Position numbers and translations under genes: made by a program
Shown: positions 34,340-64,000 of the stretch, one piece after another
Layout of the letters: the number at the start of each line of letters is the position of its first letter
Numbering within the stretch: position 1 is the first letter of the stretch
Notes under the pieces: generated by a model
What the model was told of the DNA's origin: nothing
Databases searched by the model: none
The model's input: only the letters and a program-made list of their open reading frames with translations
Assembly (NCBI GenBank): GCA_048013815.1
Contig: CM106585.1
Span: 23,560,001 to 23,624,000, forward strand
From: Setoptus koraiensis
Lineage: Eukaryota > Animalia > Arthropoda
Direction of reading: 5' to 3'
DNA: 64,000 nt

Positions 34340-34557
34340 CTCCCGCTTTTCGGGCGGGAGAATCTCGACCTCCCAGCTGAACTCGAAAGATGAAACCCAC
34401 CGCCACGTAGCTGCTAGAAACTAAAATATGCGATTGAAACAATAAATAGGTATACAAATCTATATATATTCTTTGGTTCTTGCGTCTAAATGACAATCAT
34501 TCTCAGTTGTTTGATCTAAAGTGGGAGGATGAGATTCTCCCGCTTGAAAAGCCGGAG
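34340..34557. repeat. GC-rich 35-bp inverted repeat pair (34340-34374 / 34523-34557, 30 of 35 identical). The left arm contains an internal 7-bp hairpin.
   Basis: The reverse complement of CTCCCGCTTTTCGGGCGGGAGAATCTCGACCTCCC aligns to GGGAGGATGAGATTCTCCCGCTTGAAAAGCCGGAG. Confidence 0.85.
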
Positions 34558-34910
34558 ATGGGATCAGGTAGACCGGGAAAATCTTGATGGAGGCGCGCGT
34601 AAATTACATCCGGTATACTGATGGAGTACTGACACCTGCGCCAGTTAGTACAATGATATTCTTTGATTTTTTTCAAAATATCAACAGCATCGGCCAATGT
34701 ATCACAATCAGGTAGTTTTTTTCTACAAGATGGTTCATTTGAAAGATTAAATATAATTTGCCACAAGAATACCTCGTCCAGATGTTCGGGTATAGGTGTA
34801 TTGGGGAGCATACATGTATGATTTAGAATTTCTCTCGGCGATGATCAGTCACACATTCTCCTCGGCACCCAATTGTTTAAATGGGTTGGGTTTCCAATTG
34901 GTTCCTCTGA
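34555..34910 (-). pseudogene. SIRT1: Truncated, disrupted SIRT1/Sir2 fragment
   Basis: Reads NWVPRRMCD*SSPREILNHTCMLP..IPEHLDEVFLWQIIFNLSNEPSCRKKLPDCDTLADAVDILKK / frameshift / SKNIIVLTGAGVST / frameshift / IPD-VIYARLHQDFPGLPDP. This matches the SIRT1 N-terminal helical module and GAGxS motif. It carries an in-frame TGA, an extra A in the A7 run (34666-34672), a second frameshift and loss of FRSxxG, and homology stops after PDP. Confidence 0.85.
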
Positions 34911-35273
34911 CAAGCAGTCAATGTCGAAGTTTGAGTGTTGTAGAAGAATAGCGAAAATAGAATGAACTGTTTATGCACTTGGTTAGTTAATTCTTGCGTG
35001 TCATCTGCGCGTGCCTCGATTCGCTGCAGCGCCAAATACAATTCACAAAAAACAATTGTATTTGGCGCCATGGAACTTTTGAGCATGCGCAGATTGTGCG
35101 CAGGGAAAAACTGGAACGTTCGGTACCACAGTGTACCAGTATCAATGCATATTGCATATTTGTTTTCTTTTTACTATTGGCAGCTCTATGACGAGACGTC
35201 TATCTCCTGTACATGACGCCATCTGAGCCCTTTTAAAAATATTTATACCCAGTATATACATAGTTATTACATA

Positions 35274-37070
35274 ATGCCGGAATCGGATACCTCCGGAGGC
35301 CACACTGAGGACGTTGCTATTGAATTTAGTCAATCTATCAGCAACAACGACAACAAACAGAATGACACAAAAGGAACCTATAGACAAAAGTACAAGAGAG
35401 CATGGGAACTGGATACAGAGTTGAGAGATTGGCTGTCACCATGTTTAGGCGACCAATTTGCAGCGTTCTGCAAATTTTGCAGATGTAAATTGCATGCTCA
35501 CAAAAAAGGACTATTGGCACATGCTAAATCGTGCAAACACAGAAAGCATTTACTCAATCCCAATGACAGCTCAGTTATTGTTGCCTCCAATGATAGCCAT
35601 ATTGTTGATCAATCGACCTCATCCAATGATGGTCTTGCTCTTAAGAAACAAAGAAAATCCAGCCCACACAATTTTAATGATAGCTGGCTAAACGACCCCC
35701 TATTTGCACCTTGGCTGCGCAAGGTTCAAACGAACCTCAGTAAAGCGTTATGTATTGCTTGTCGGTGCGTTATAACAGCCGGCAGGAGTGAGTTGTTAAA
35801 GCACAGCCAAGCTGCCAAGCATAAAAAGGCAGCTCTAGATGGACCATTTGAAGAAGTCGGTGAAATCGATCTAGATTGGTTAGATCCATCTTTCAATCCA
35901 CCTAGCAACATTTCAGCCAACACTACAGTATTGAATATTCCTTCTGTGTCTTATAATCAAATGCCAATGATTGCCAAGGGATCAGCGCAGATACAACTGC
36001 CCGGATTGCCTCTAAATGAAGTGCTACAAAACTTAAACGAGCATGTCCCATTAATGCTAGCAGAAAGTTGGGATAATGTGGGTGTAATAACTCAGCCGAC
36101 TCAACCTATTAAGGTATATAACATACTATTAACAATCGATCTCAATGAAAAGATCGTCGAAGAGGCCCTAAAGAAACAAGCTCAGTTTATAATCAGCTAT
36201 CATCCACCAATATTTAGGCCTGTTAAAAGTTTAAACCCCTCGAATTGGATGGACAAGGCCATACTGATGTGCATTGAGAATCGTATCGCAGTGTATTCAC
36301 CACATACCGCCTTGGATGCAGTCAAAGGAGGTATTAACGATTGGCTTATATCCGCTTTTCTAACTGGAGACACGAACAAAATTCGCCCTATTAAACATTC
36401 ACGCGATAACAGGTACACAGCCTATATCGAAGCACTGCTCCCGGAGAGCCAAAATGAAATTACGCAAGCCCTCCAAGGTGTCAAAGGAGTCGATAGAATG
36501 GTGCTTGCTGTCAATCCGAATGTGGAGTACGGAGGATCAGATGTGAGAGCCTCTTGCGACGATGACACGTTACCCGAGATATATGAGGTTTTGCTCAACA
36601 GTCCCACCGTTCAAAGTCCTGTAGCACAATTCTGCAATAGGGTCACCAAACTTGTTTCTCCTCCGATACCAGGTGTCGGTTTGGGTCGTCTACTAACTCT
36701 GGATTCTTCTTTGCCTCTGTACGAGGTTGTTCATCGAATGAAACAACACCTGGATCAAACTAATGTAAGACTTGCGCTCTCGCCTAGACACACTAGAGAT
36801 ACAAAAGTGACTACCATCGCAGTTTGTGCTGGATCTGGAGGAAGCATTCTGAAAGGTTGTTCTGCAGATGTATGGATAACTGGTGAGATGTCACACCACG
36901 AGGTTTTAGATGCTATCCATAGAGGATCGTCGGTGATACTATGCGAGCATAGCAACACCGAGCGTGGTTTTCTCAAACAATGGTCCAAGCAGTTGAAGTC
37001 AGAGGTTCTCAATGACGTAGTAAATGTTATTCTATCTGAGATTGACAAGGATCCTGTAAGGATCGTGTGA
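35274..37070 (+). CDS. NIF3L1: NIF3-like protein 1 (DUF34/YbgI family) with an N-terminal extension carrying two C2H2 zinc fingers, 598 aa, intronless
   Basis: Residues ~245-598 contain AESWDNVG, ISYHPPIFRP, YSPHTALDA, AVCAGSGGS, TGEMSHHEVLDA and CEHSNTERGFL, so the metal-ligand His/Asp/Glu residues are present. Residues 36-91 and 132-185 each contain W-x8-WL..C-x2-C-x13-H-x5-H. Confidence 0.93.
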   Translation: MPESDTSGGHTEDVAIEFSQSISNNDNKQNDTKGTYRQKYKRAWELDTELRDWLSPCLGDQFAAFCKFCRCKLHAHKKGLLAHAKSCKHRKHLLNPNDSSVIVASNDSHIVDQSTSSNDGLALKKQRKSSPHNFNDSWLNDPLFAPWLRKVQTNLSKALCIACRCVITAGRSELLKHSQAAKHKKAALDGPFEEVGEIDLDWLDPSFNPPSNISANTTVLNIPSVSYNQMPMIAKGSAQIQLPGLPLNEVLQNLNEHVPLMLAESWDNVGVITQPTQPIKVYNILLTIDLNEKIVEEALKKQAQFIISYHPPIFRPVKSLNPSNWMDKAILMCIENRIAVYSPHTALDAVKGGINDWLISAFLTGDTNKIRPIKHSRDNRYTAYIEALLPESQNEITQALQGVKGVDRMVLAVNPNVEYGGSDVRASCDDDTLPEIYEVLLNSPTVQSPVAQFCNRVTKLVSPPIPGVGLGRLLTLDSSLPLYEVVHRMKQHLDQTNVRLALSPRHTRDTKVTTIAVCAGSGGSILKGCSADVWITGEMSHHEVLDAIHRGSSVILCEHSNTERGFLKQWSKQLKSEVLNDVVNVILSEIDKDPVRIV

Positions 37071-37149: not shown

Positions 37150-37629
37150 CTAATCCGCGGAGCCGCTTTCTTCGAAATTCAACCAACTCGCCTCTACAAT
37201 GGCAGAAACTCTTTTTTCATATTCTCGGCGATTCTCTTGATACAATTGTGCCGCCAGACTATTTGCAGGGCTATTAGGGTTAGGTTCATCTAATAGAGAT
37301 TGAATTGACGTCAATATAGCTGAAACGTCATAGGTAGGTGACCAACGATTTTGAAGTATGTCTAAACAGATGCTCCCATCAGCGTAGACATTGGGATGAA
37401 ACATTTTAGATACAAATCGTACTGTTGGTGGTTTGTTAGGATATTCTTCTGTGAACTCAAGCGTCAATTTAAATGTTCCATCCTCAAATGGTGTATCATG
37501 GGGTCCAAATATTACTGCGTTCCATATCATTATATTATTATCGGTGGGTGCGCCTGAAACTCCGGCTGGGGGATCCTCTTGAAGACGCTTGAAGTCTCTC
37601 ATCAAACGCCTCCTAGCTGGCGTAGACAT
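37150..37629 (-). CDS. UBE2A: Ubiquitin-conjugating enzyme E2 A/B (Rad6/Ubc6), 159 aa, intronless CDS
   Basis: [21 protein letters not shown]...[36 protein letters not shown]: the canonical Rad6 sequence with the catalytic Cys. Confidence 0.98.
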
Positions 37630-37837: not shown

Positions 37838-37920
37838 TAATAATAATGATGGGAATAATAATAATAATAATGATAATAATAATAATGATAGTAATAATAA
37901 TATTAACAATAATAACAATG
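37838..37920. repeat. Imperfect (AAT)n microsatellite
   Basis: Direct reading of the sequence. Confidence 0.9.
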
Positions 37921-37929
37921 ATTGAGGTA

Positions 37930-38220
37930 AAGGGTGTTTCAATCAGAACCTGGATTTGAACTGATTATGCTACGCTGCCTTCCACAGTGCTTTATTTTTC
38001 GATATTTGTCGATGCATTCTGGAAGTTACAGCGTGCAGAAAGAGACTATGTGCAGCGCGAAATAATTAGTTGTGCCAAGCGAATGGGACTTTTCTCGACC
38101 TCAACACAGTCTATCTGATTTGTTGTGCCGAATTTCATTTGATCACCACTTCGGAAAGAATATGTGCTAGCGAGCAGCACAGTGTGTTTTATTGATCCAG
38201 GTTCTGATTGAAACACCCTT
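37930..38220. mobile_element. 291-bp non-autonomous Tc1/mariner-type MITE
   Basis: Perfect 26-bp TIRs AAGGGTGTTTCAATCAGAACCTGGAT (37930-37955) and ATCCAGGTTCTGATTGAAACACCCTT (38195-38220), flanked on both sides by TA (37928-37929, 38221-38222). No internal ORF. Confidence 0.9.
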
Positions 38221-40961
38221 TACAATCTACCAAGACGATTTAGAGTAAAACAACAAAAAATTCTCTGTTTATCTGTATGTCTGTGTTTTTTCTCTCTTCT
38301 CTTCTATTTCTCTCAACAATGTTTTCGTGTACGTTCGTATATGCGATGATGCTGGTATTCTCACAACACAATTACTGTAACACATAATAAAAAGTTACTA
38401 TAGTGGAAAGAGTTGGCTTCGAGCAGTCATGTTCTTACATCAACTAGCAATCTAGTCATTCTAGAATAGAGGGCGCACATTACGAAATCATCACCTAGAG
38501 AAGCGCAGTCTCTCGGTGTCTTGGCAAACCATTTCTCGTCAGAACAAAATAAAACTCAGTTACAATGTTACTGCACTATAAAGCATAAGTAAAATTGATT
38601 TGCAAACAAAACAAGAAATTCATGAACTATCCATAAAAGTACATCCAGGCGTAAACTTGTAAATACTTCTCTAGCCCATTCTCTAAACTGTGAAAGTCTA
38701 CGCATAACAGACGCACAATCACACGGTATTGTAAACGTAAAAATGTACGTTTAGACCGATTCACGCCTGAATTTACCATTCGATCGAAATGTCTTTATTT
38801 ATGTTGTGGATACTTAAGCACACTCACACGCATATGAATCATGTACCTACCTATCACCATTATCCATGTATTGTAATTATTTCATTTAGCTACACCATCA
38901 ATTCACCTTGACTGACATGAAACTATCTACAACCCCAACAACTAAAACGGCAACTCTACCAACAACTAAAACAAACTGTTATACGACTACTATAGACGAC
39001 TTCTTGCAACATGTTTACGTACATGATGAGTATGTTCACTGCCTTGCCAAGTTATCCTACCTTATTGACTCATCAATTGGTCTAGTCGATTGACTGCCAA
39101 AGTATTAGAGGCATTGTATTCTATAACAAGAGATTGGTCAGATCAGCTTTAGAGTGTAAGGGTTTCATCTTCAAGTTAGGCTCAAATAATTGAATCTAAC
39201 TTTCAAATATCTGTCCATCTCTGGTGGTTGCATCATGTCTGACTCTTATTGTTGCTGCGATCATCTGAGAACAAAATATTCTCATCACATGCACTTCGAT
39301 GTCATCATTTCAGCCGATGTAACACAAATGTACCAAACCTATTAGCCCAAATAATTGTGGGTGAGCATTGGCCAACATACGACTAGATCAAAGATCATCA
39401 TCATCGTATTCGGTCAACAACACGACACAACAGGGAAAACAAATTTGATATATTGTTGTAACATCATCACTGATCAAATAAGATCAACAACAAGTATCTA
39501 ATTGTTAAGAACGCAGGTGAAAGGATAAGATCGTTAAGACGACCTGTTTGTGAGTAAAATAAAGGGCTTGTGTCGAATGCTGACTGACCCATTCTCCCCT
39601 GGTGGCAATATTTTTGAAACACATTTTTGTGTTTACTTGCTGTACAAAGGGGGGCAGAGGATGTTGCCGTCTCTCTTATTGGCCATGTTGTCTTTTCGTT
39701 TTTCGCCCAAAAGTTAGTCGCACAACCTATGTGCATACTTTTCTTCTTTTGGCTTTTCAAAATTGGCGCTTATATATCGGGTAGAACAAAACGTGAGCCT
39801 TGTAATATAGAATGAAGTTTGCGGAAACAGACGCTCTCTTTTTGTACAGGGTGTCAGCATTTGACGAATGAGCGAGCTTTGAGCTCCTCAGCGCCGCACA
39901 GTAGTAAGCTCTCTATCTAACGCTCAGCTATGTATGCGCGCAATGTATACAGTCGCCACGTTAGTATAGATGGACTCGAGTTTTGAGTGAATCTCACTCT
40001 GAACATTACCAACAGGGTGTTGCAAAGTACTATCAGATATACGGTGTTTAGTTGTGAGTGTTTACAATACACTGTTGGTGCTTTTTGATTGCGCACTTTC
40101 AATGCGCTGGCATCCGACTGACAATATAAAGTGCCACTAGCTAGCGAAAGGTGCTGAAATAGAATCGACGCCTAGCGGACACAATCGGCATGAGATTTGG
40201 TGAATACATGTAAGCGTCATCCACCGAAGAGTAGCACTAACTTTGTTGTGTGCCTGCGCGGGCAATAGTTGGGCGCGCTCATTGTGCGCTTGTACAGAAA
40301 ATATGTTCTATCCTTCTTTTCGTTCTATGCGCACAATTTCAGAAGTGCTCTCACACTGTACTCTACTGCACTAGTACAGCCAGATGCAATACATCTATCT
40401 CCATGCAGCCTTCTCGTTTGTTTGTGTGTGCGTCTATCTATTCTTGTGTGTGAGTGTCTGCTTCTGATTATGTTTAGTTCTGTGCAGGCGGTATAGCGAT
40501 ACCATTATTATTGTCTTGCGCTAGTGTGTGTGTGTGTGTGTGTGTGTGCCGCACGAGAATGCACAAAAATAAACTTTATAATGCACAGTTTTGGATTGCC
40601 ATTGTAAATTGCATAGAAGTTGTACTCACTGTAATATATTTGGCACAGGCATAATTTCAAATCTATAATATAGACGACACAATTTTGTGTGTCGCACATA
40701 TCCTACACATAGAGATTTAATATGTAATGATCCAGTTGAACAATACAACACATTTGCCTCTAATACCGACGATTATATTGATCGGCAGATCGCTAGCGAC
40801 CGACTTCGATATAATTTGATCTATTATTAATTTAATTACAATACACACAATTGATATTATTATTATCAATACAATATTATTATCACTATTATCACAGTCA
40901 TAAGGCCGCCTCTATTATTGAGAGATCAAAAAATCTAATTGAAACAAAAATTAGGACAAAA

Positions 40962-63400: not shown

Positions 63401-64000
63401 TTAATGATTGAAATTATGGATGATGTGGGGGAGTTCTTCGAAATCTGGAACAACAACACCAGAATGTTTAATTATCTCTCGAGCTGCATAGCAACCGACT
63501 TCAATACATAGACTTAACGGAGCTAGTTGAGCGTACTGAGACAGAAATCCACCTACAAATGCATCGCCTGCCCCATTACTATCTACTATGTCTTCTTCTT
63601 TGACCGGTTGACAGATGAATTCTTCAACTACCATCGTACCATTGAGCCTGTAGGCCACTATGATTGGATCTTGACCCCGCGTTATGACTACAATTCTCTC
63701 TTTTGAAGCCTTCATTTTCGGTTCGCACGATATCATACTAGCGATCCCCTTGAGTCCAATACTAATAGGCCATTTTCTTAATTTAGCGTAAGCCTCCGCT
63801 TCGGAATCATTACCAAAAACAATATCCACATAGGGCATCACTTGCAAGAGTCGTTCACCATATATTTCGCTGATATATGGCGCACTCAAATTAAGACAAA
63901 ATGTTTTATCAGCTCTATTCACAACATGCCTACCTAGTAACATAAAAGTGTCTACTGAAGTTGTTAGTAAGAAACCTGAGATGTATATTATGTTGCAATC
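63401..64000 (-). CDS. ADK: Adenosine kinase (PfkB family), 5' partial
   Basis: The frame is open from the window end: DCNIIYISGFLLT..TFCLNLSAPYI..VMPYVDIVFGNDSEA..RIVVITRG..IVDSNGAGDAFVGGFL. The PfkB anion-hole motif and catalytic Asp are present. Confidence 0.95.
   Translation of the reverse strand, partial: DCNIIYISGFLLTTSVDTFMLLGRHVVNRADKTFCLNLSAPYISEIYGERLLQVMPYVDIVFGNDSEAEAYAKLRKWPISIGLKGIASMISCEPKMKASKERIVVITRGQDPIIVAYRLNGTMVVEEFICQPVKEEDIVDSNGAGDAFVGGFLSQYAQLAPLSLCIEVGCYAAREIIKHSGVVVPDFEELPHIIHNFNH

What the first reader, a model, noticed from the sequence alone, without database searches (positions are those of the whole stretch)
35274..37070. Two tandem C2H2 zinc fingers fused in frame to a complete NIF3L1
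Seen: one stop-free, intronless 598-aa ORF. Residues 36-91 and 132-185 are two homologous fingers with identical spacing (W-x8-WL...C-x2-C-x13-H-x5-H; C66/C69/H83/H89 and C160/C163/H177/H183). A ~60-aa linker leads to an intact NIF3 domain. Known: NIF3L1/DUF34 proteins are normally stand-alone dinuclear-metal proteins that form hexameric toroids and have been linked to transcriptional co-regulation. From memory, this finger type resembles the N-terminal fingers of hAT/ZBED/ZNF862-like transposase-derived proteins. Inference: a transposon-derived nucleic-acid-binding module was co-opted onto NIF3L1, which could give a multivalent ring with up to 12 fingers targeted to chromatin or RNA. The flanking SIRT1 fragment and inverted repeats point to a rearranged locus. 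M230/M232 just before the NIF3 domain could start a short isoform.
Basis: partly seen in the sequence, partly recalled or inferred. Interest (0 to 1): 0.78.

Follow-up and report, generated by a model that had tools for sequence, protein, structure and literature searches.

The report
Transposase-type zinc fingers fused to NIF3L1
This mite gene really does join two zinc fingers of a kind found on hAT transposases to a complete NIF3L1 enzyme, but the fusion is an old, strongly conserved feature of acariform mites, already sitting unrecognised in public protein sets, not a peculiarity of this locus.

Summary
Window 35274-37070(+) is one intronless 598-aa ORF. It has two homologous CCHH fingers (res 36-91 and 132-185), disordered linkers and a complete NIF3/DUF34 domain (res 247-594).

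The fusion is not specific to this locus. Thirty-nine other NIF3L1 proteins have the same two-finger layout. The named ones come from both acariform orders: Oribatida, Parasitengona, Eupodoidea and Eriophyoidea. Tetranychoidea, Astigmata and all non-mite hits lack the fingers.

The fingers are as constrained as the catalytic lobes. Mean identity is 69-74 %, all eight zinc ligands are invariant, and dN/dS is about 0.02-0.03.

The finger has no Pfam model. It belongs to a large family (534 cluster representatives) whose commonest partner is a DUF4371/hAT transposase body, named KIAA1586 or SCAND3-like by sources. The tandem pair is colinear with the first two fingers of such transposases. By sequence the family is closest to zf-BED. 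By predicted fold it is closest to U1/matrin-type fingers.

The likeliest reading is an ancient host-transposase-type fusion that tethers the NIF3L1 oligomer to nucleic acid.

The upstream "SIRT1 fragment" is real but unrelated to the fusion's origin. It is part of a 0.7-kb duplicate of the PAN3-SIRT1 intergenic region and ends at the NIF3L1 ATG.

The parts
35274..37070 (+). Whole intronless ORF, 598 aa plus stop: finger-finger-NIF3L1
   Evidence: It aligns full-length with 39 two-finger homologues.
35274..35378 (+). N-terminal tail, res 1-35: acidic (net -5), disordered, poorly conserved
   Evidence: Mean identity 16.5 %; pLDDT below 50; charge.
35379..35546 (+). Finger 1, res 36-91: W44, W53-L54, C66, C69, H83, H89; net charge +9
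   Evidence: Mean identity 74 % and invariant ligands. The single-finger AF2 model has pLDDT 91. Finger-HMM E 3e-26. dN/dS 0.008-0.02 in relatives.
35547..35666 (+). Linker 1, res 92-131: disordered, with a basic patch (KKQRK) just before finger 2
   Evidence: Mean identity 19 %; pLDDT below 50 for res 99-129; the basic patch recurs in homologues.
35667..35828 (+). Finger 2, res 132-185: W138, W147-L148, C160, C163, H177, H183; net charge +6
   Evidence: Mean identity 69 % and invariant ligands; pLDDT 90-96 in the full-length model; finger-HMM E 2e-24.
35829..35888 (+). Conserved acidic post-finger segment, res 186-205 (G.FEE..E.DL.WL), net charge -7, with a short predicted helix at 197-201
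   Evidence: Mean identity 53 %, against 17-26 % for the linkers; consensus; helix. Its role is unknown. The vestigial-third-finger idea was not significant.
35889..36011 (+). Linker 2, res 206-246: disordered; contains M230 and M232
   Evidence: Mean identity 26 %; pLDDT below 50 for res 207-239.
36012..37055 (+). NIF3/DUF34 domain, res 247-594, with the eukaryotic metal-site motifs YHP (309), HTALD (344), GEMSHH (537) and EHSNTE (558), and a central insert (about res 371-470, window 36384-36683)
   Evidence: Pfam PF01784 E 7e-62; TIGR00486; motifs; Foldseek to YqfO 2gx8 and SA1388 with E 1e-24 to 1e-26.
34560..35273 (.). Upstream region, which is a 0.7-kb duplicate of contig 2. Window 34560-34910(-) is a broken sirtuin 5' fragment. 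Window 34913-35274 is a copy of the PAN3-SIRT1 intergenic region and ends at the NIF3L1 ATG. It is the presumed present promoter and 5'UTR (inference).
   Evidence: blastn 87-88 % identity to G000:C2:18136746-18137689. The intact 590-aa sirtuin is on C2. The divergent gene is PAN3.

Best explanation
This is the orthologue, in an eriophyoid-like acariform mite, of an ancient and selectively maintained fusion gene. Two tandem BED/U1-like CCHH zinc fingers are fused in one exon to a complete NIF3L1 (DUF34) dinuclear-metal protein. The fingers belong to a family whose main home is the N-terminus of DUF4371/Buster-type hAT transposases. Shown here: the architecture; its presence in both acariform orders; purifying selection on the fingers equal to that on the NIF3 lobes; the homology and colinearity of the finger pair with transposase N-termini; and independently folded, strongly basic fingers on flexible linkers. 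Inferred: the fusion arose by capture of a transposase nucleic-acid-binding module in or before the acariform ancestor, and was later lost in Astigmata and Tetranychoidea. The fingers probably bind nucleic acid. DNA is the more likely target, because in transposases this position recognises transposon ends. Because NIF3 proteins assemble as hexamers (trimers of dimers in solved prokaryotic structures), the protein would present up to twelve fingers. That would tether the intact NIF3 metal centre, or NIF3L1's co-regulator function, to chromatin or another nucleic acid with high avidity.
For: The ORF and domains are established. Thirty-nine other NIF3L1 proteins have two fingers, and 79 of the best 120 have none. 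The named fused species fall in Sarcoptiformes/Oribatida and in Trombidiformes/Parasitengona, Eupodoidea and Eriophyoidea. The fingers show 74 % and 69 % mean identity, against 67-68 % for the NIF3 lobes and 17-26 % for the linkers, and all 8 ligands are invariant. Finger dN/dS is 0.017-0.033, NIF3 lobes 0.016-0.021, and linker dN is 6-10 times higher. The family has 534 representatives. The commonest partner is the hAT transposase body (19 of 48 tails), with the finger at the extreme N-terminus before DUF4371 and Dimer_Tnp_hAT. The pair is colinear with P0125 and P0130, and sources use the names KIAA1586 and SCAND3-like. zf-BED is the Pfam model that recognises most family members (9 of 75) and passes its gathering score on finger copies of P0134 and P0171. 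The fingers have net charges of +9 and +6. The fold is beads on a string. GC3 is equal in the finger and NIF3 parts. This genome has no transposon copy of the finger. Literature: the Nif3 proteins TTHA1606 and MJ0927 bind DNA in EMSA (PMC4163360); transposase DNA-binding domains are recurrently captured by host genes (bioRxiv 10.1101/2020.05.07.082677); and a THAP-finger::NIF3L1 fusion is listed for Trichoplusia ni (PMC8469502 supplement).
Against: No Pfam finger model hits the window's own fingers. By predicted structure the core is nearer to RNA-binding matrin/U1 fingers (Z 5.0-5.4) than to solved BED fingers (Z 2.2-2.6). Profile hits to solved structures are all U1/matrin-type and weak. The direction of transfer (transposon to host, or the reverse) is not resolved. 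No binding, oligomer or expression data exist for any fused protein. The short contigs I inspected are genomic, not transcripts. The absence of fingers in Tetranychoidea and Astigmata rests on gene models, not on their genomes.
Confidence: 0.6

Rival explanations
1. The fingers are functionally U1/matrin/JAZ-type RNA-binding fingers. They direct the NIF3L1 oligomer to structured or double-stranded RNA or to an RNP (for example a spliceosomal, tRNA or export complex), not to DNA.
For: The best structural matches are the matrin-type finger of SF3A2 (Z 5.4, 1.4 A over 43 residues), TUT4 and TUT1 (Z 5.3 and 5.0) and Prp11. The only profile hits among solved structures are ZFa, U1-C, WBP4, ZMAT2 and PRP9. 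The H-x5-H spacing fits, and zf-U1 hits 6 of 75 family members. The only other hit of the finger profile in this genome is the JAZ-type finger of a DNAJC21-like protein. From the literature, NIF3L1 binds THOC7/NIF3L1BP1 (table in PMC8469502).
Against: All these scores are modest for a 60-residue domain (E 0.008-0.5, Z below 6). The family's main context is the N-terminus of hAT transposases, which must recognise DNA ends. zf-BED recognises more members than zf-U1 does.
Confidence: 0.25
2. The fingers have lost, or never had, nucleic-acid binding. They act as protein-interaction or regulatory modules, for example recruiting partners or autoregulating the NIF3 ring together with the adjacent acidic segment.
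For: BED-type fingers can serve as protein-binding modules: ZBED3 in the oocyte SCMC/cytoplasmic lattice structures appears among the fold hits (rank 14). A conserved acidic segment (net -7) follows the basic fingers and could fold back on them. The atlas look-alikes include the SPIN-DOC-type finger, but as a lead only.
Against: The fingers carry high net positive charge and a conserved Lys/His-rich helix. The zf-C2H2_12 model hits only 1 of 75 members. The AF2 monomer model shows no docking of the fingers on the NIF3 domain, although a monomer model is a weak test.
Confidence: 0.1
3. The long ORF is a local accident of this rearranged locus (a recent chimera, read-through or assembly artefact), and the fingers are not part of the functional NIF3L1 protein.
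For: A 0.7-kb duplicated segment carrying a broken sirtuin fragment abuts the start codon. There is no transcript evidence for this species.
Against: The same uninterrupted architecture occurs in 39 other proteins from independent assemblies and in both acariform orders. The fingers are under strong purifying selection. Codon GC3 is identical across the ORF. The duplication ends upstream of the ORF and is much younger than the fusion.
Confidence: 0.02

Closest known systems
NIF3L1 / DUF34 (PF01784, TIGR00486 YbgI/SA1388 family)
   Same: The domain is complete, with the eukaryotic metal-site motifs and the central insert. The predicted fold matches YqfO and SA1388.
   Different: Ordinary metazoan NIF3L1 proteins in this search are about 340-450 aa with no fingers: 79 of the best 120 hits have none. 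This protein carries about 245 extra N-terminal residues with two fingers.
Host-transposase fusion genes (transposase capture; Cosby et al., bioRxiv 10.1101/2020.05.07.082677)
   Same: A transposase-type nucleic-acid-binding domain is joined to a host domain and kept under purifying selection. hAT is one of the main donor superfamilies in that survey.
   Different: The described cases are tetrapod and mostly pair the transposase domain with regulatory domains such as KRAB, encoded by separate exons. Here the partner is a metalloenzyme-like housekeeping protein, the clade is mites, and the fusion is far older and lies in one exon. The cognate transposon and the direction of transfer are not identified.
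BED zinc finger (PF02892), the N-terminal DNA-binding finger of hAT transposases and ZBED proteins
   Same: It has the CxxC...H-x5-H signature preceded by conserved aromatic residues and the same position in hAT transposases. The Pfam model recognises 9 of 75 family members and passes threshold on finger copies in P0134 and P0171.
   Different: The window's fingers do not hit the model. The Cys-to-His spacer is short (13 residues). Solved BED fingers are only weak structural matches (Z 2.2-2.6).
U1/matrin/JAZ-type C2H2 fingers (zf-U1, zf-met, zf-C2H2_jaz; SF3A2, U1-C, TUT1/4/7, ZFa)
   Same: They share the H-x5-H spacing, a long C-terminal helix ending in a K-H-K motif, and give the best structural superpositions.
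   Different: Those fingers lack the conserved W-x8-WL N-terminal extension. No Pfam model of this group hits the window's fingers, and the family context is transposases, not RNPs.
THAP-finger::NIF3L1 of Trichoplusia ni (XP_026742495.1, listed in Data Table S11 of PMC8469502)
   Same: It is another transposase-type (P-element-type) zinc finger fused N-terminally to NIF3L1 in an arthropod.
   Different: The finger fold and family are different, and it is a single species entry rated 'valid, conditional'. I did not examine it here.

Membership tests
NIF3L1 / DUF34 | Full-length match to PF01784 and to the TIGR00486 equivalog above the curated cut-offs | tested here: met
   PF01784 scores 209.8 bits (cut-off 23.4) over profile positions 3-256 of 256. 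TIGR00486 scores 174.4 bits (cut-off 130.55).
NIF3L1 / DUF34 | Conserved metal-site motifs in their eukaryotic form (Tyr replaces the first His of the N-terminal His pair; D-x3-T-G-E followed by M-x-H-H) | tested here: met
   YHP at 309, HTALD at 344, GEMSHH at 537 and EHSNTE at 558. These columns are invariant in 40 homologues. The motif description comes from PMC8469502.
NIF3L1 / DUF34 | NIF3 fold | tested here: met
   Foldseek to 2gx8, 3lnl, 2nyd, 2fyw, 4iwg, 1nmo and 2yyb, E 1e-12 to 2e-26, probability 1.00.
NIF3L1 / DUF34 | Hexameric (trimer-of-dimers) assembly and bound dinuclear metal | not testable with these tools
   Only monomer predictions were possible. The assembly is inferred from solved prokaryotic homologues (PMC4163360, PMC1779786).
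BED zinc finger (PF02892) | Match of the Pfam model to the fingers themselves | tested here: not met
   There is no hit at E <= 1 on residues 1-230, and none on either finger alone.
BED zinc finger (PF02892) | Family-level link: homologous fingers recognised by the model | tested here: inconclusive
   Nine of 75 members hit zf-BED (best E 1e-5), and it passes its gathering score on finger copies in P0134 and P0171. However, 6 of 75 hit zf-U1 instead.
BED zinc finger (PF02892) | Cx2C...Hx3-5H signature preceded by conserved aromatic residues; N-terminal position in hAT transposases | tested here: met
   The signature is read directly from the sequence. The position before DUF4371 and Dimer_Tnp_hAT is seen in P0125, P0130, P0152, P0179, P0207 and P0226.
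BED zinc finger (PF02892) | Structural similarity to solved BED fingers | tested here: inconclusive
   ZBED2 Z 2.6, Hermes BED 2.5 and 2.2, ZBED1 2.2, and ZBED3 TM 0.49. All rank below the matrin-type fingers.
U1/matrin-type zinc finger | Match to zf-U1, zf-met or zf-C2H2_jaz models | tested here: not met
   There is no hit on the window's fingers. Six of 75 relatives hit zf-U1 weakly (best E 8e-4).
U1/matrin-type zinc finger | Fold of the CCHH core with H-x5-H and an extended helix | tested here: met
   SF3A2 Z 5.4 with rmsd 1.4 A over 43 residues; TUT1 Z 5.0 with 1.3 A over 41; Foldseek probability 0.96-1.00. The Z-scores are modest in absolute terms.
Host-transposase fusion gene | The fused domain is homologous to the corresponding domain of bona fide transposases | tested here: met
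   The pair is colinear with P0125 (DUF4371, FAM200-ZBED5 RNase-like; 15 near-identical full-length cluster members seen on 34 contigs in all) at E 1e-15, and with P0130 (Dimer_Tnp_hAT) at E 5e-17.
Host-transposase fusion gene | Purifying selection on the transposase-derived part | tested here: met
   dN/dS is 0.017-0.033 on the fingers in three Aceria-like orthologues (dS is high, 0.6-2.7, so values are approximate). The ligands are invariant.
Host-transposase fusion gene | Direction of transfer from transposon to host, with an identifiable cognate element | not tested
   No transposon with this finger exists in this genome. I did not attempt a rooted finger phylogeny, because 60 residues resolve poorly.
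Host-transposase fusion gene | A transcript spanning both parts | not testable with these tools
   A single uninterrupted ORF makes this likely, but no RNA data were available. The inspected contigs are genomic.

The most novel reading that the evidence does not exclude
The W-x8-WL CCHH finger is a portable nucleic-acid-targeting module that homo-oligomeric housekeeping enzymes have captured repeatedly and independently. Examples found here are NIF3L1 in acariform mites, PYCR3 in barnacles, HIUase in several insect orders, peroxiredoxin in psyllids, QPRTase in an ascidian and threonine aldolase in an isopod. In each case the enzyme's oligomeric scaffold would multimerise weak single fingers into a high-avidity chromatin- or RNA-binding particle. 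If so, these enzymes double as architectural or regulatory nucleic-acid-binding proteins, and mite NIF3L1 offers a natural handle on the unknown function of the NIF3 family.
Probability: 0.2. Interest if true: 0.8.

Novelty: new variant of a known kind. Interest (0 to 1): 0.55.

Why it matters
NIF3/DUF34 is one of the most widely conserved protein families that still has no agreed function. Scattered evidence links it to transcriptional co-regulation and to DNA binding. A lineage in which NIF3L1 has carried two strongly constrained nucleic-acid-type fingers since before the two acariform orders diverged suggests that at least one conserved role of the protein is exercised on nucleic acid. It also provides a construct in which the target can be found directly. 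It extends the host-transposase-fusion idea beyond vertebrate transcription factors to an enzyme-like partner in arthropods. It also exposes an unmodelled finger family that domain-based surveys cannot see: the DUF34 fusion census missed it.

Tried and rejected
1. A vestigial third finger. The conserved post-finger segment (DLDWLDPSF) aligned to the start of the next finger in both transposase comparisons. However, the finger HMM scores it no better than shuffled controls: real scores are at most 0.1 bits, shuffled scores reach 2.4 bits. This is not supported.

2. dN/dS with the window gene itself. Synonymous sites are saturated against every available relative (pS 0.81-0.88), so I used three closer Aceria-like orthologues instead.

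3. Transcript support from short contigs. L005 is a metagenome scaffold and L006 carries another called gene fragment, so both look genomic, not transcript-derived.

4. The index-based homologue search with the finger region alone returned only NIF3L1 orthologues and gave no names for other carriers. Names came from cluster look-ups instead.

5. The atlas lead to zf-C2H2_12 (the SPIN-DOC finger) was barely confirmed: 1 of 75 members.

6. Pfam SIR2 does not detect the sirtuin fragment. Direct tblastn and blastn against the intact paralogue were needed.

7. A transposon origin visible at this locus: no terminal inverted repeats bracket the ORF and the genome has no other copy of the finger.

8. 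Literature searches for the mite fusion or for the other enzyme fusions found nothing. The held library is incomplete, so this is weak evidence of novelty.

The contig is a mite's, not human. No spliced model or read-through was needed.
Full report
**Observation**

The ORF at 35274..37070 (+) exists and encodes 598 residues. Met1 is the first ATG of a frame that is open for only 19 more codons upstream.

The two fingers align without gaps at 30 % identity, E 3e-9.

Pfam DUF34_NIF3 covers residues 247-594 over the whole profile (E 7e-62). TIGR00486 scores 174 bits against a cut-off of 131. The N-terminal 230 residues hit no Pfam model.

**What the protein looks like**

A single-finger AlphaFold model built on 27 family sequences is confident (pLDDT 91). 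It shows a short N-terminal helix carrying the first Trp, a three-stranded sheet bearing the CxxC, and a kinked C-terminal helix bearing the two His.

The full-length model, built on 40 orthologues, is beads on a string:
- Both fingers fold independently: finger 1 at about 80 pLDDT, finger 2 at about 90-96.
- The NIF3 domain is above 90.
- Residues 1-40, 99-129 and 207-239 are disordered.

The fingers are strongly basic (+9 and +6). The 20 residues after finger 2 are acidic (-7) and conserved. The NIF3 part keeps the eukaryotic metal-site motifs (YHP, HTALD, D-x3-TGE-MSHH, EHSNTE, compared with PMC8469502). It matches the insert-bearing NIF3 structures YqfO and SA1388 at E 1e-24 to 1e-26. GC3 is the same (0.405 and 0.406) in the finger and NIF3 parts.

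**Distribution**

A search with the whole protein found about 40 proteins of 526-707 aa covering 92-100 % of the query at 48-62 % identity. A finger HMM finds two fingers in 39 of them, one finger in two partial models, and none in the other 79 of the best 120 NIF3L1 hits.

Named fused species:
- Oppiella nova and Oppia nitens (Sarcoptiformes, Oribatida)
- Dinothrombium tinctorium and Leptotrombidium deliense (Trombidiformes, Parasitengona; lineage looked up only for Dinothrombium)
- Halotydeus destructor (Eupodoidea)
- Aceria tosichella and Fragariocoptes setiger (Eriophyoidea; lineage looked up only for Fragariocoptes)

Finger-less mites are Tetranychus, Panonychus and Brevipalpus (Tetranychoidea) and Blomia (Astigmata). 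All non-mite hits also lack fingers.

In a maximum-likelihood tree of the NIF3 part, the window protein groups with Fragariocoptes and the Aceria cluster, the non-mite rows form a separate group (93/97), and the finger-less mite proteins sit on very long branches of 0.65-1.23. Given the accepted taxonomy, the simplest history is one gain at or before the acariform ancestor and two losses. This is an inference. The losses rest on gene models, and I could not search those genomes.

The genome is 48.8 Mb in two contigs. Together with the intronless genes and the tree position, that fits an eriophyoid-type mite. It is not human.

**Selection**

Across 17 long homologues, mean identity to the window protein by region is:

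| Region | Mean identity |
|---|---|
| Finger 1 | 74 % |
| Finger 2 | 69 % |
| NIF3 lobes | 67-68 % |
| Post-finger segment | 53 % |
| NIF3 insert | 42 % |
| Tail and linkers | 17-26 % |

All eight zinc ligands and the Trp residues are invariant wherever the region is present.

Synonymous sites are saturated against the window gene. Among three Aceria-like orthologues with DNA in hand, Nei-Gojobori dN/dS is 0.017-0.033 for the two fingers and 0.016-0.021 for the NIF3 lobes. The tail and linkers have 6-10 times higher dN. dS is large, so these ratios are approximate. The fingers are therefore as constrained as the catalytic core.

**What kind of finger**

An exhaustive HMMER search with residues 1-230 found 534 cluster representatives at E <= 1e-3. 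Many have two to five copies. After removing the fingers, the commonest partner (19 of 48 tails of at least 150 aa) is a single homologous group with DUF4371, Dimer_Tnp_hAT and FAM200-ZBED5 RNase-like signatures, that is, Buster-type hAT transposases. The finger always sits at the N-terminus. Sources name some of these proteins 'E3 SUMO-protein ligase KIAA1586' and 'SCAN domain-containing protein 3-like', and others come from lampreys and lizards.

The window's finger 1-linker-finger 2 aligns colinearly with the first two fingers of P0125 (E 1e-15) and of P0130 (E 5e-17). P0125's cluster holds 15 near-identical full-length members, seen on 34 contigs in all.

Classification within the zinc fingers is less clean:
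- **By sequence:** zf-BED recognises the most family members (9 of 75) and passes its gathering score on finger copies of P0134 and P0171. But zf-U1 recognises 6 of 75, and no model hits the window's own fingers.
- **By profile against solved structures:** only U1/matrin-type fingers appear, weakly (ZFa E 0.008, then U1-C, WBP4, ZMAT2 and PRP9).
- **By predicted fold:** SF3A2 (Z 5.4, 1.4 A over 43 residues), TUT4 (5.3), TUT1 (5.0) and Prp11 (4.8) lead. BED fingers score Z 2.2-2.6.
- **In this genome:** the finger profile finds only the two NIF3L1 fingers and, weakly, the JAZ-type finger of a DNAJC21-like gene.

I therefore call it an unmodelled BED/U1-like subfamily with a characteristic W-x8-WL N-terminal extension.

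**Mechanism**

*Shown:* an ancient, constrained, single-exon fusion of two independently folded, basic, transposase-type fingers to an intact NIF3L1.

*Inferred:* the fingers bind nucleic acid. I favour DNA (about 0.6), because in hAT transposases this position recognises transposon ends and because zf-BED is the best sequence affiliation. RNA (about 0.25) is a serious rival because of the fold matches.

NIF3 proteins crystallise as hexamers, and two prokaryotic members bind DNA in EMSA (PMC4163360). Mammalian NIF3L1 is reported as a co-repressor partner of Trip15/CSN2 and binds THOC7 (table in PMC8469502). This is untested.

**Context and side claims**

The 'SIRT1 fragment' is real. Window 34560-34910 (-) is 72 % identical in protein and 88 % in DNA to residues about 27-153 of an intact 590-aa sirtuin on contig 2. 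It has an in-frame stop, frameshifts in the GAGVS...IPDFRS motif, and a roughly 194-bp deletion that removes the start.

The homology continues over window 34913-35274 to the contig-2 intergenic region between that sirtuin and a divergently transcribed PAN3 gene, and it stops at the NIF3L1 ATG. So the whole region directly upstream of NIF3L1 is a copy of a bidirectional promoter region, with NIF3L1 in PAN3's place. This is a local, comparatively recent event (87-88 % identity). It has nothing to do with the origin of the fusion.

Inverted repeats exist, but none flanks the ORF. M230 and M232 lie in a disordered, poorly conserved linker, and nothing supports a short isoform.

**Known or new**

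The architecture is present in public protein sets under the plain name 'NIF3-like protein 1', so the gene is not a discovery of this window. I found no description of it. The DUF34 fusion census worked from InterPro signatures. It lists WD40, BolA, FAD, RING/THAP, EF-hand and HAT fusions, including a THAP::NIF3L1 in Trichoplusia ni, but no mite entry. Full-text searches returned nothing. The nearest concept is host-transposase fusion by transposase capture, described for tetrapod transcription factors.

**A wider pattern, noticed in passing**

The same finger family, in one or two copies, precedes unrelated enzymes in other lineages:
- PYCR3 in barnacles
- HIUase/transthyretin in a mealybug, a wasp and a beetle
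- peroxiredoxin in psyllids
- QPRTase in an ascidian
- threonine aldolase in an isopod

From general knowledge, all of these enzymes are homo-oligomers. Some of the entries are automatic gene models and may be chimeric. Others sit on contigs barely longer than the ORF.

**Verdict**

This is an ancient acariform fusion, not a locus-specific novelty. It is a new variant of a known kind, of moderate interest.

Noticed in passing
window 34560-35274; G000:C2:18136746-18137689 (L002, L003): A 0.7-kb segmental duplicate of the PAN3-SIRT1 divergent intergenic region plus the first ~150 codons of the sirtuin (now broken by a stop, frameshifts and a ~194-bp deletion) lies immediately upstream of NIF3L1. 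Its homology ends at the NIF3L1 ATG, so NIF3L1 may now be driven by a copied PAN3-side promoter.
   Followed up: yes
P0142, P0169, P0178, P0219, P0227, P0245 (PYCR3); P0190, P0242, P0254 (HIUase); P0133, P0171 (peroxiredoxin); P0159 (QPRTase); P0137 (threonine aldolase): The same finger family, in one or two N-terminal copies, is fused to unrelated homo-oligomeric enzymes in barnacles, several insect orders, psyllids, an ascidian and an isopod. It is also fused to BTB (P0158) and Myb/MADF (P0157) domains. Some of these are automatic gene models that need checking.
   Followed up: partly
window 37150-37629 (-): An intronless 159-aa ubiquitin-conjugating enzyme (UQ_con, E 5e-54; it resembles RAD6/UBE2A-B, which was not tested) lies tail-to-tail with NIF3L1. 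Only 79 bp separate the two stop codons, showing how compact this genome is.
   Followed up: partly
window 37927-37955 and 38195-38223: A perfect 29-nt inverted repeat with arms 239 nt apart lies upstream of the UBC gene, next to an AAT/GAT-rich tandem stretch (37838-37924). It could be a small hairpin element or a MITE.
   Followed up: no
window 56001-64000: Extreme composition: GC is 8-21 %, GC skew reaches +0.97 and AT skew reaches -0.93. This looks like a long T-rich simple or satellite-like tract at the end of the window.
   Followed up: no
P0042, P0046, P0111, P0050, P0053 in the tree: The finger-less mite NIF3L1 proteins (Tetranychoidea, Blomia) sit on very long branches (0.65-1.23 against a median of 0.26). 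Loss of the fingers appears to coincide with accelerated evolution of the NIF3 domain.
   Followed up: partly
window 35829-35888 (res 186-205): A conserved acidic segment (G.FEE..E.DL.WL, net charge -7) directly follows the basic fingers in all fused orthologues, with a short predicted helix. Its function is unknown. It could be an autoinhibitory or partner-binding motif.
   Followed up: partly
G000:C2:10725599-10725769 (L013 1498-2655, -): A DNAJC21-like gene (DnaJ + zuotin homology domain + JAZ-type finger) is the only other hit of the finger profile in this genome.
   Followed up: yes
window 34340-34375 and 34522-34557: An imperfect 36-nt inverted repeat (86 % complementary, arms 146 nt apart) lies just beyond the distal end of the duplicated sirtuin fragment (which ends at 34560).
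   Followed up: no
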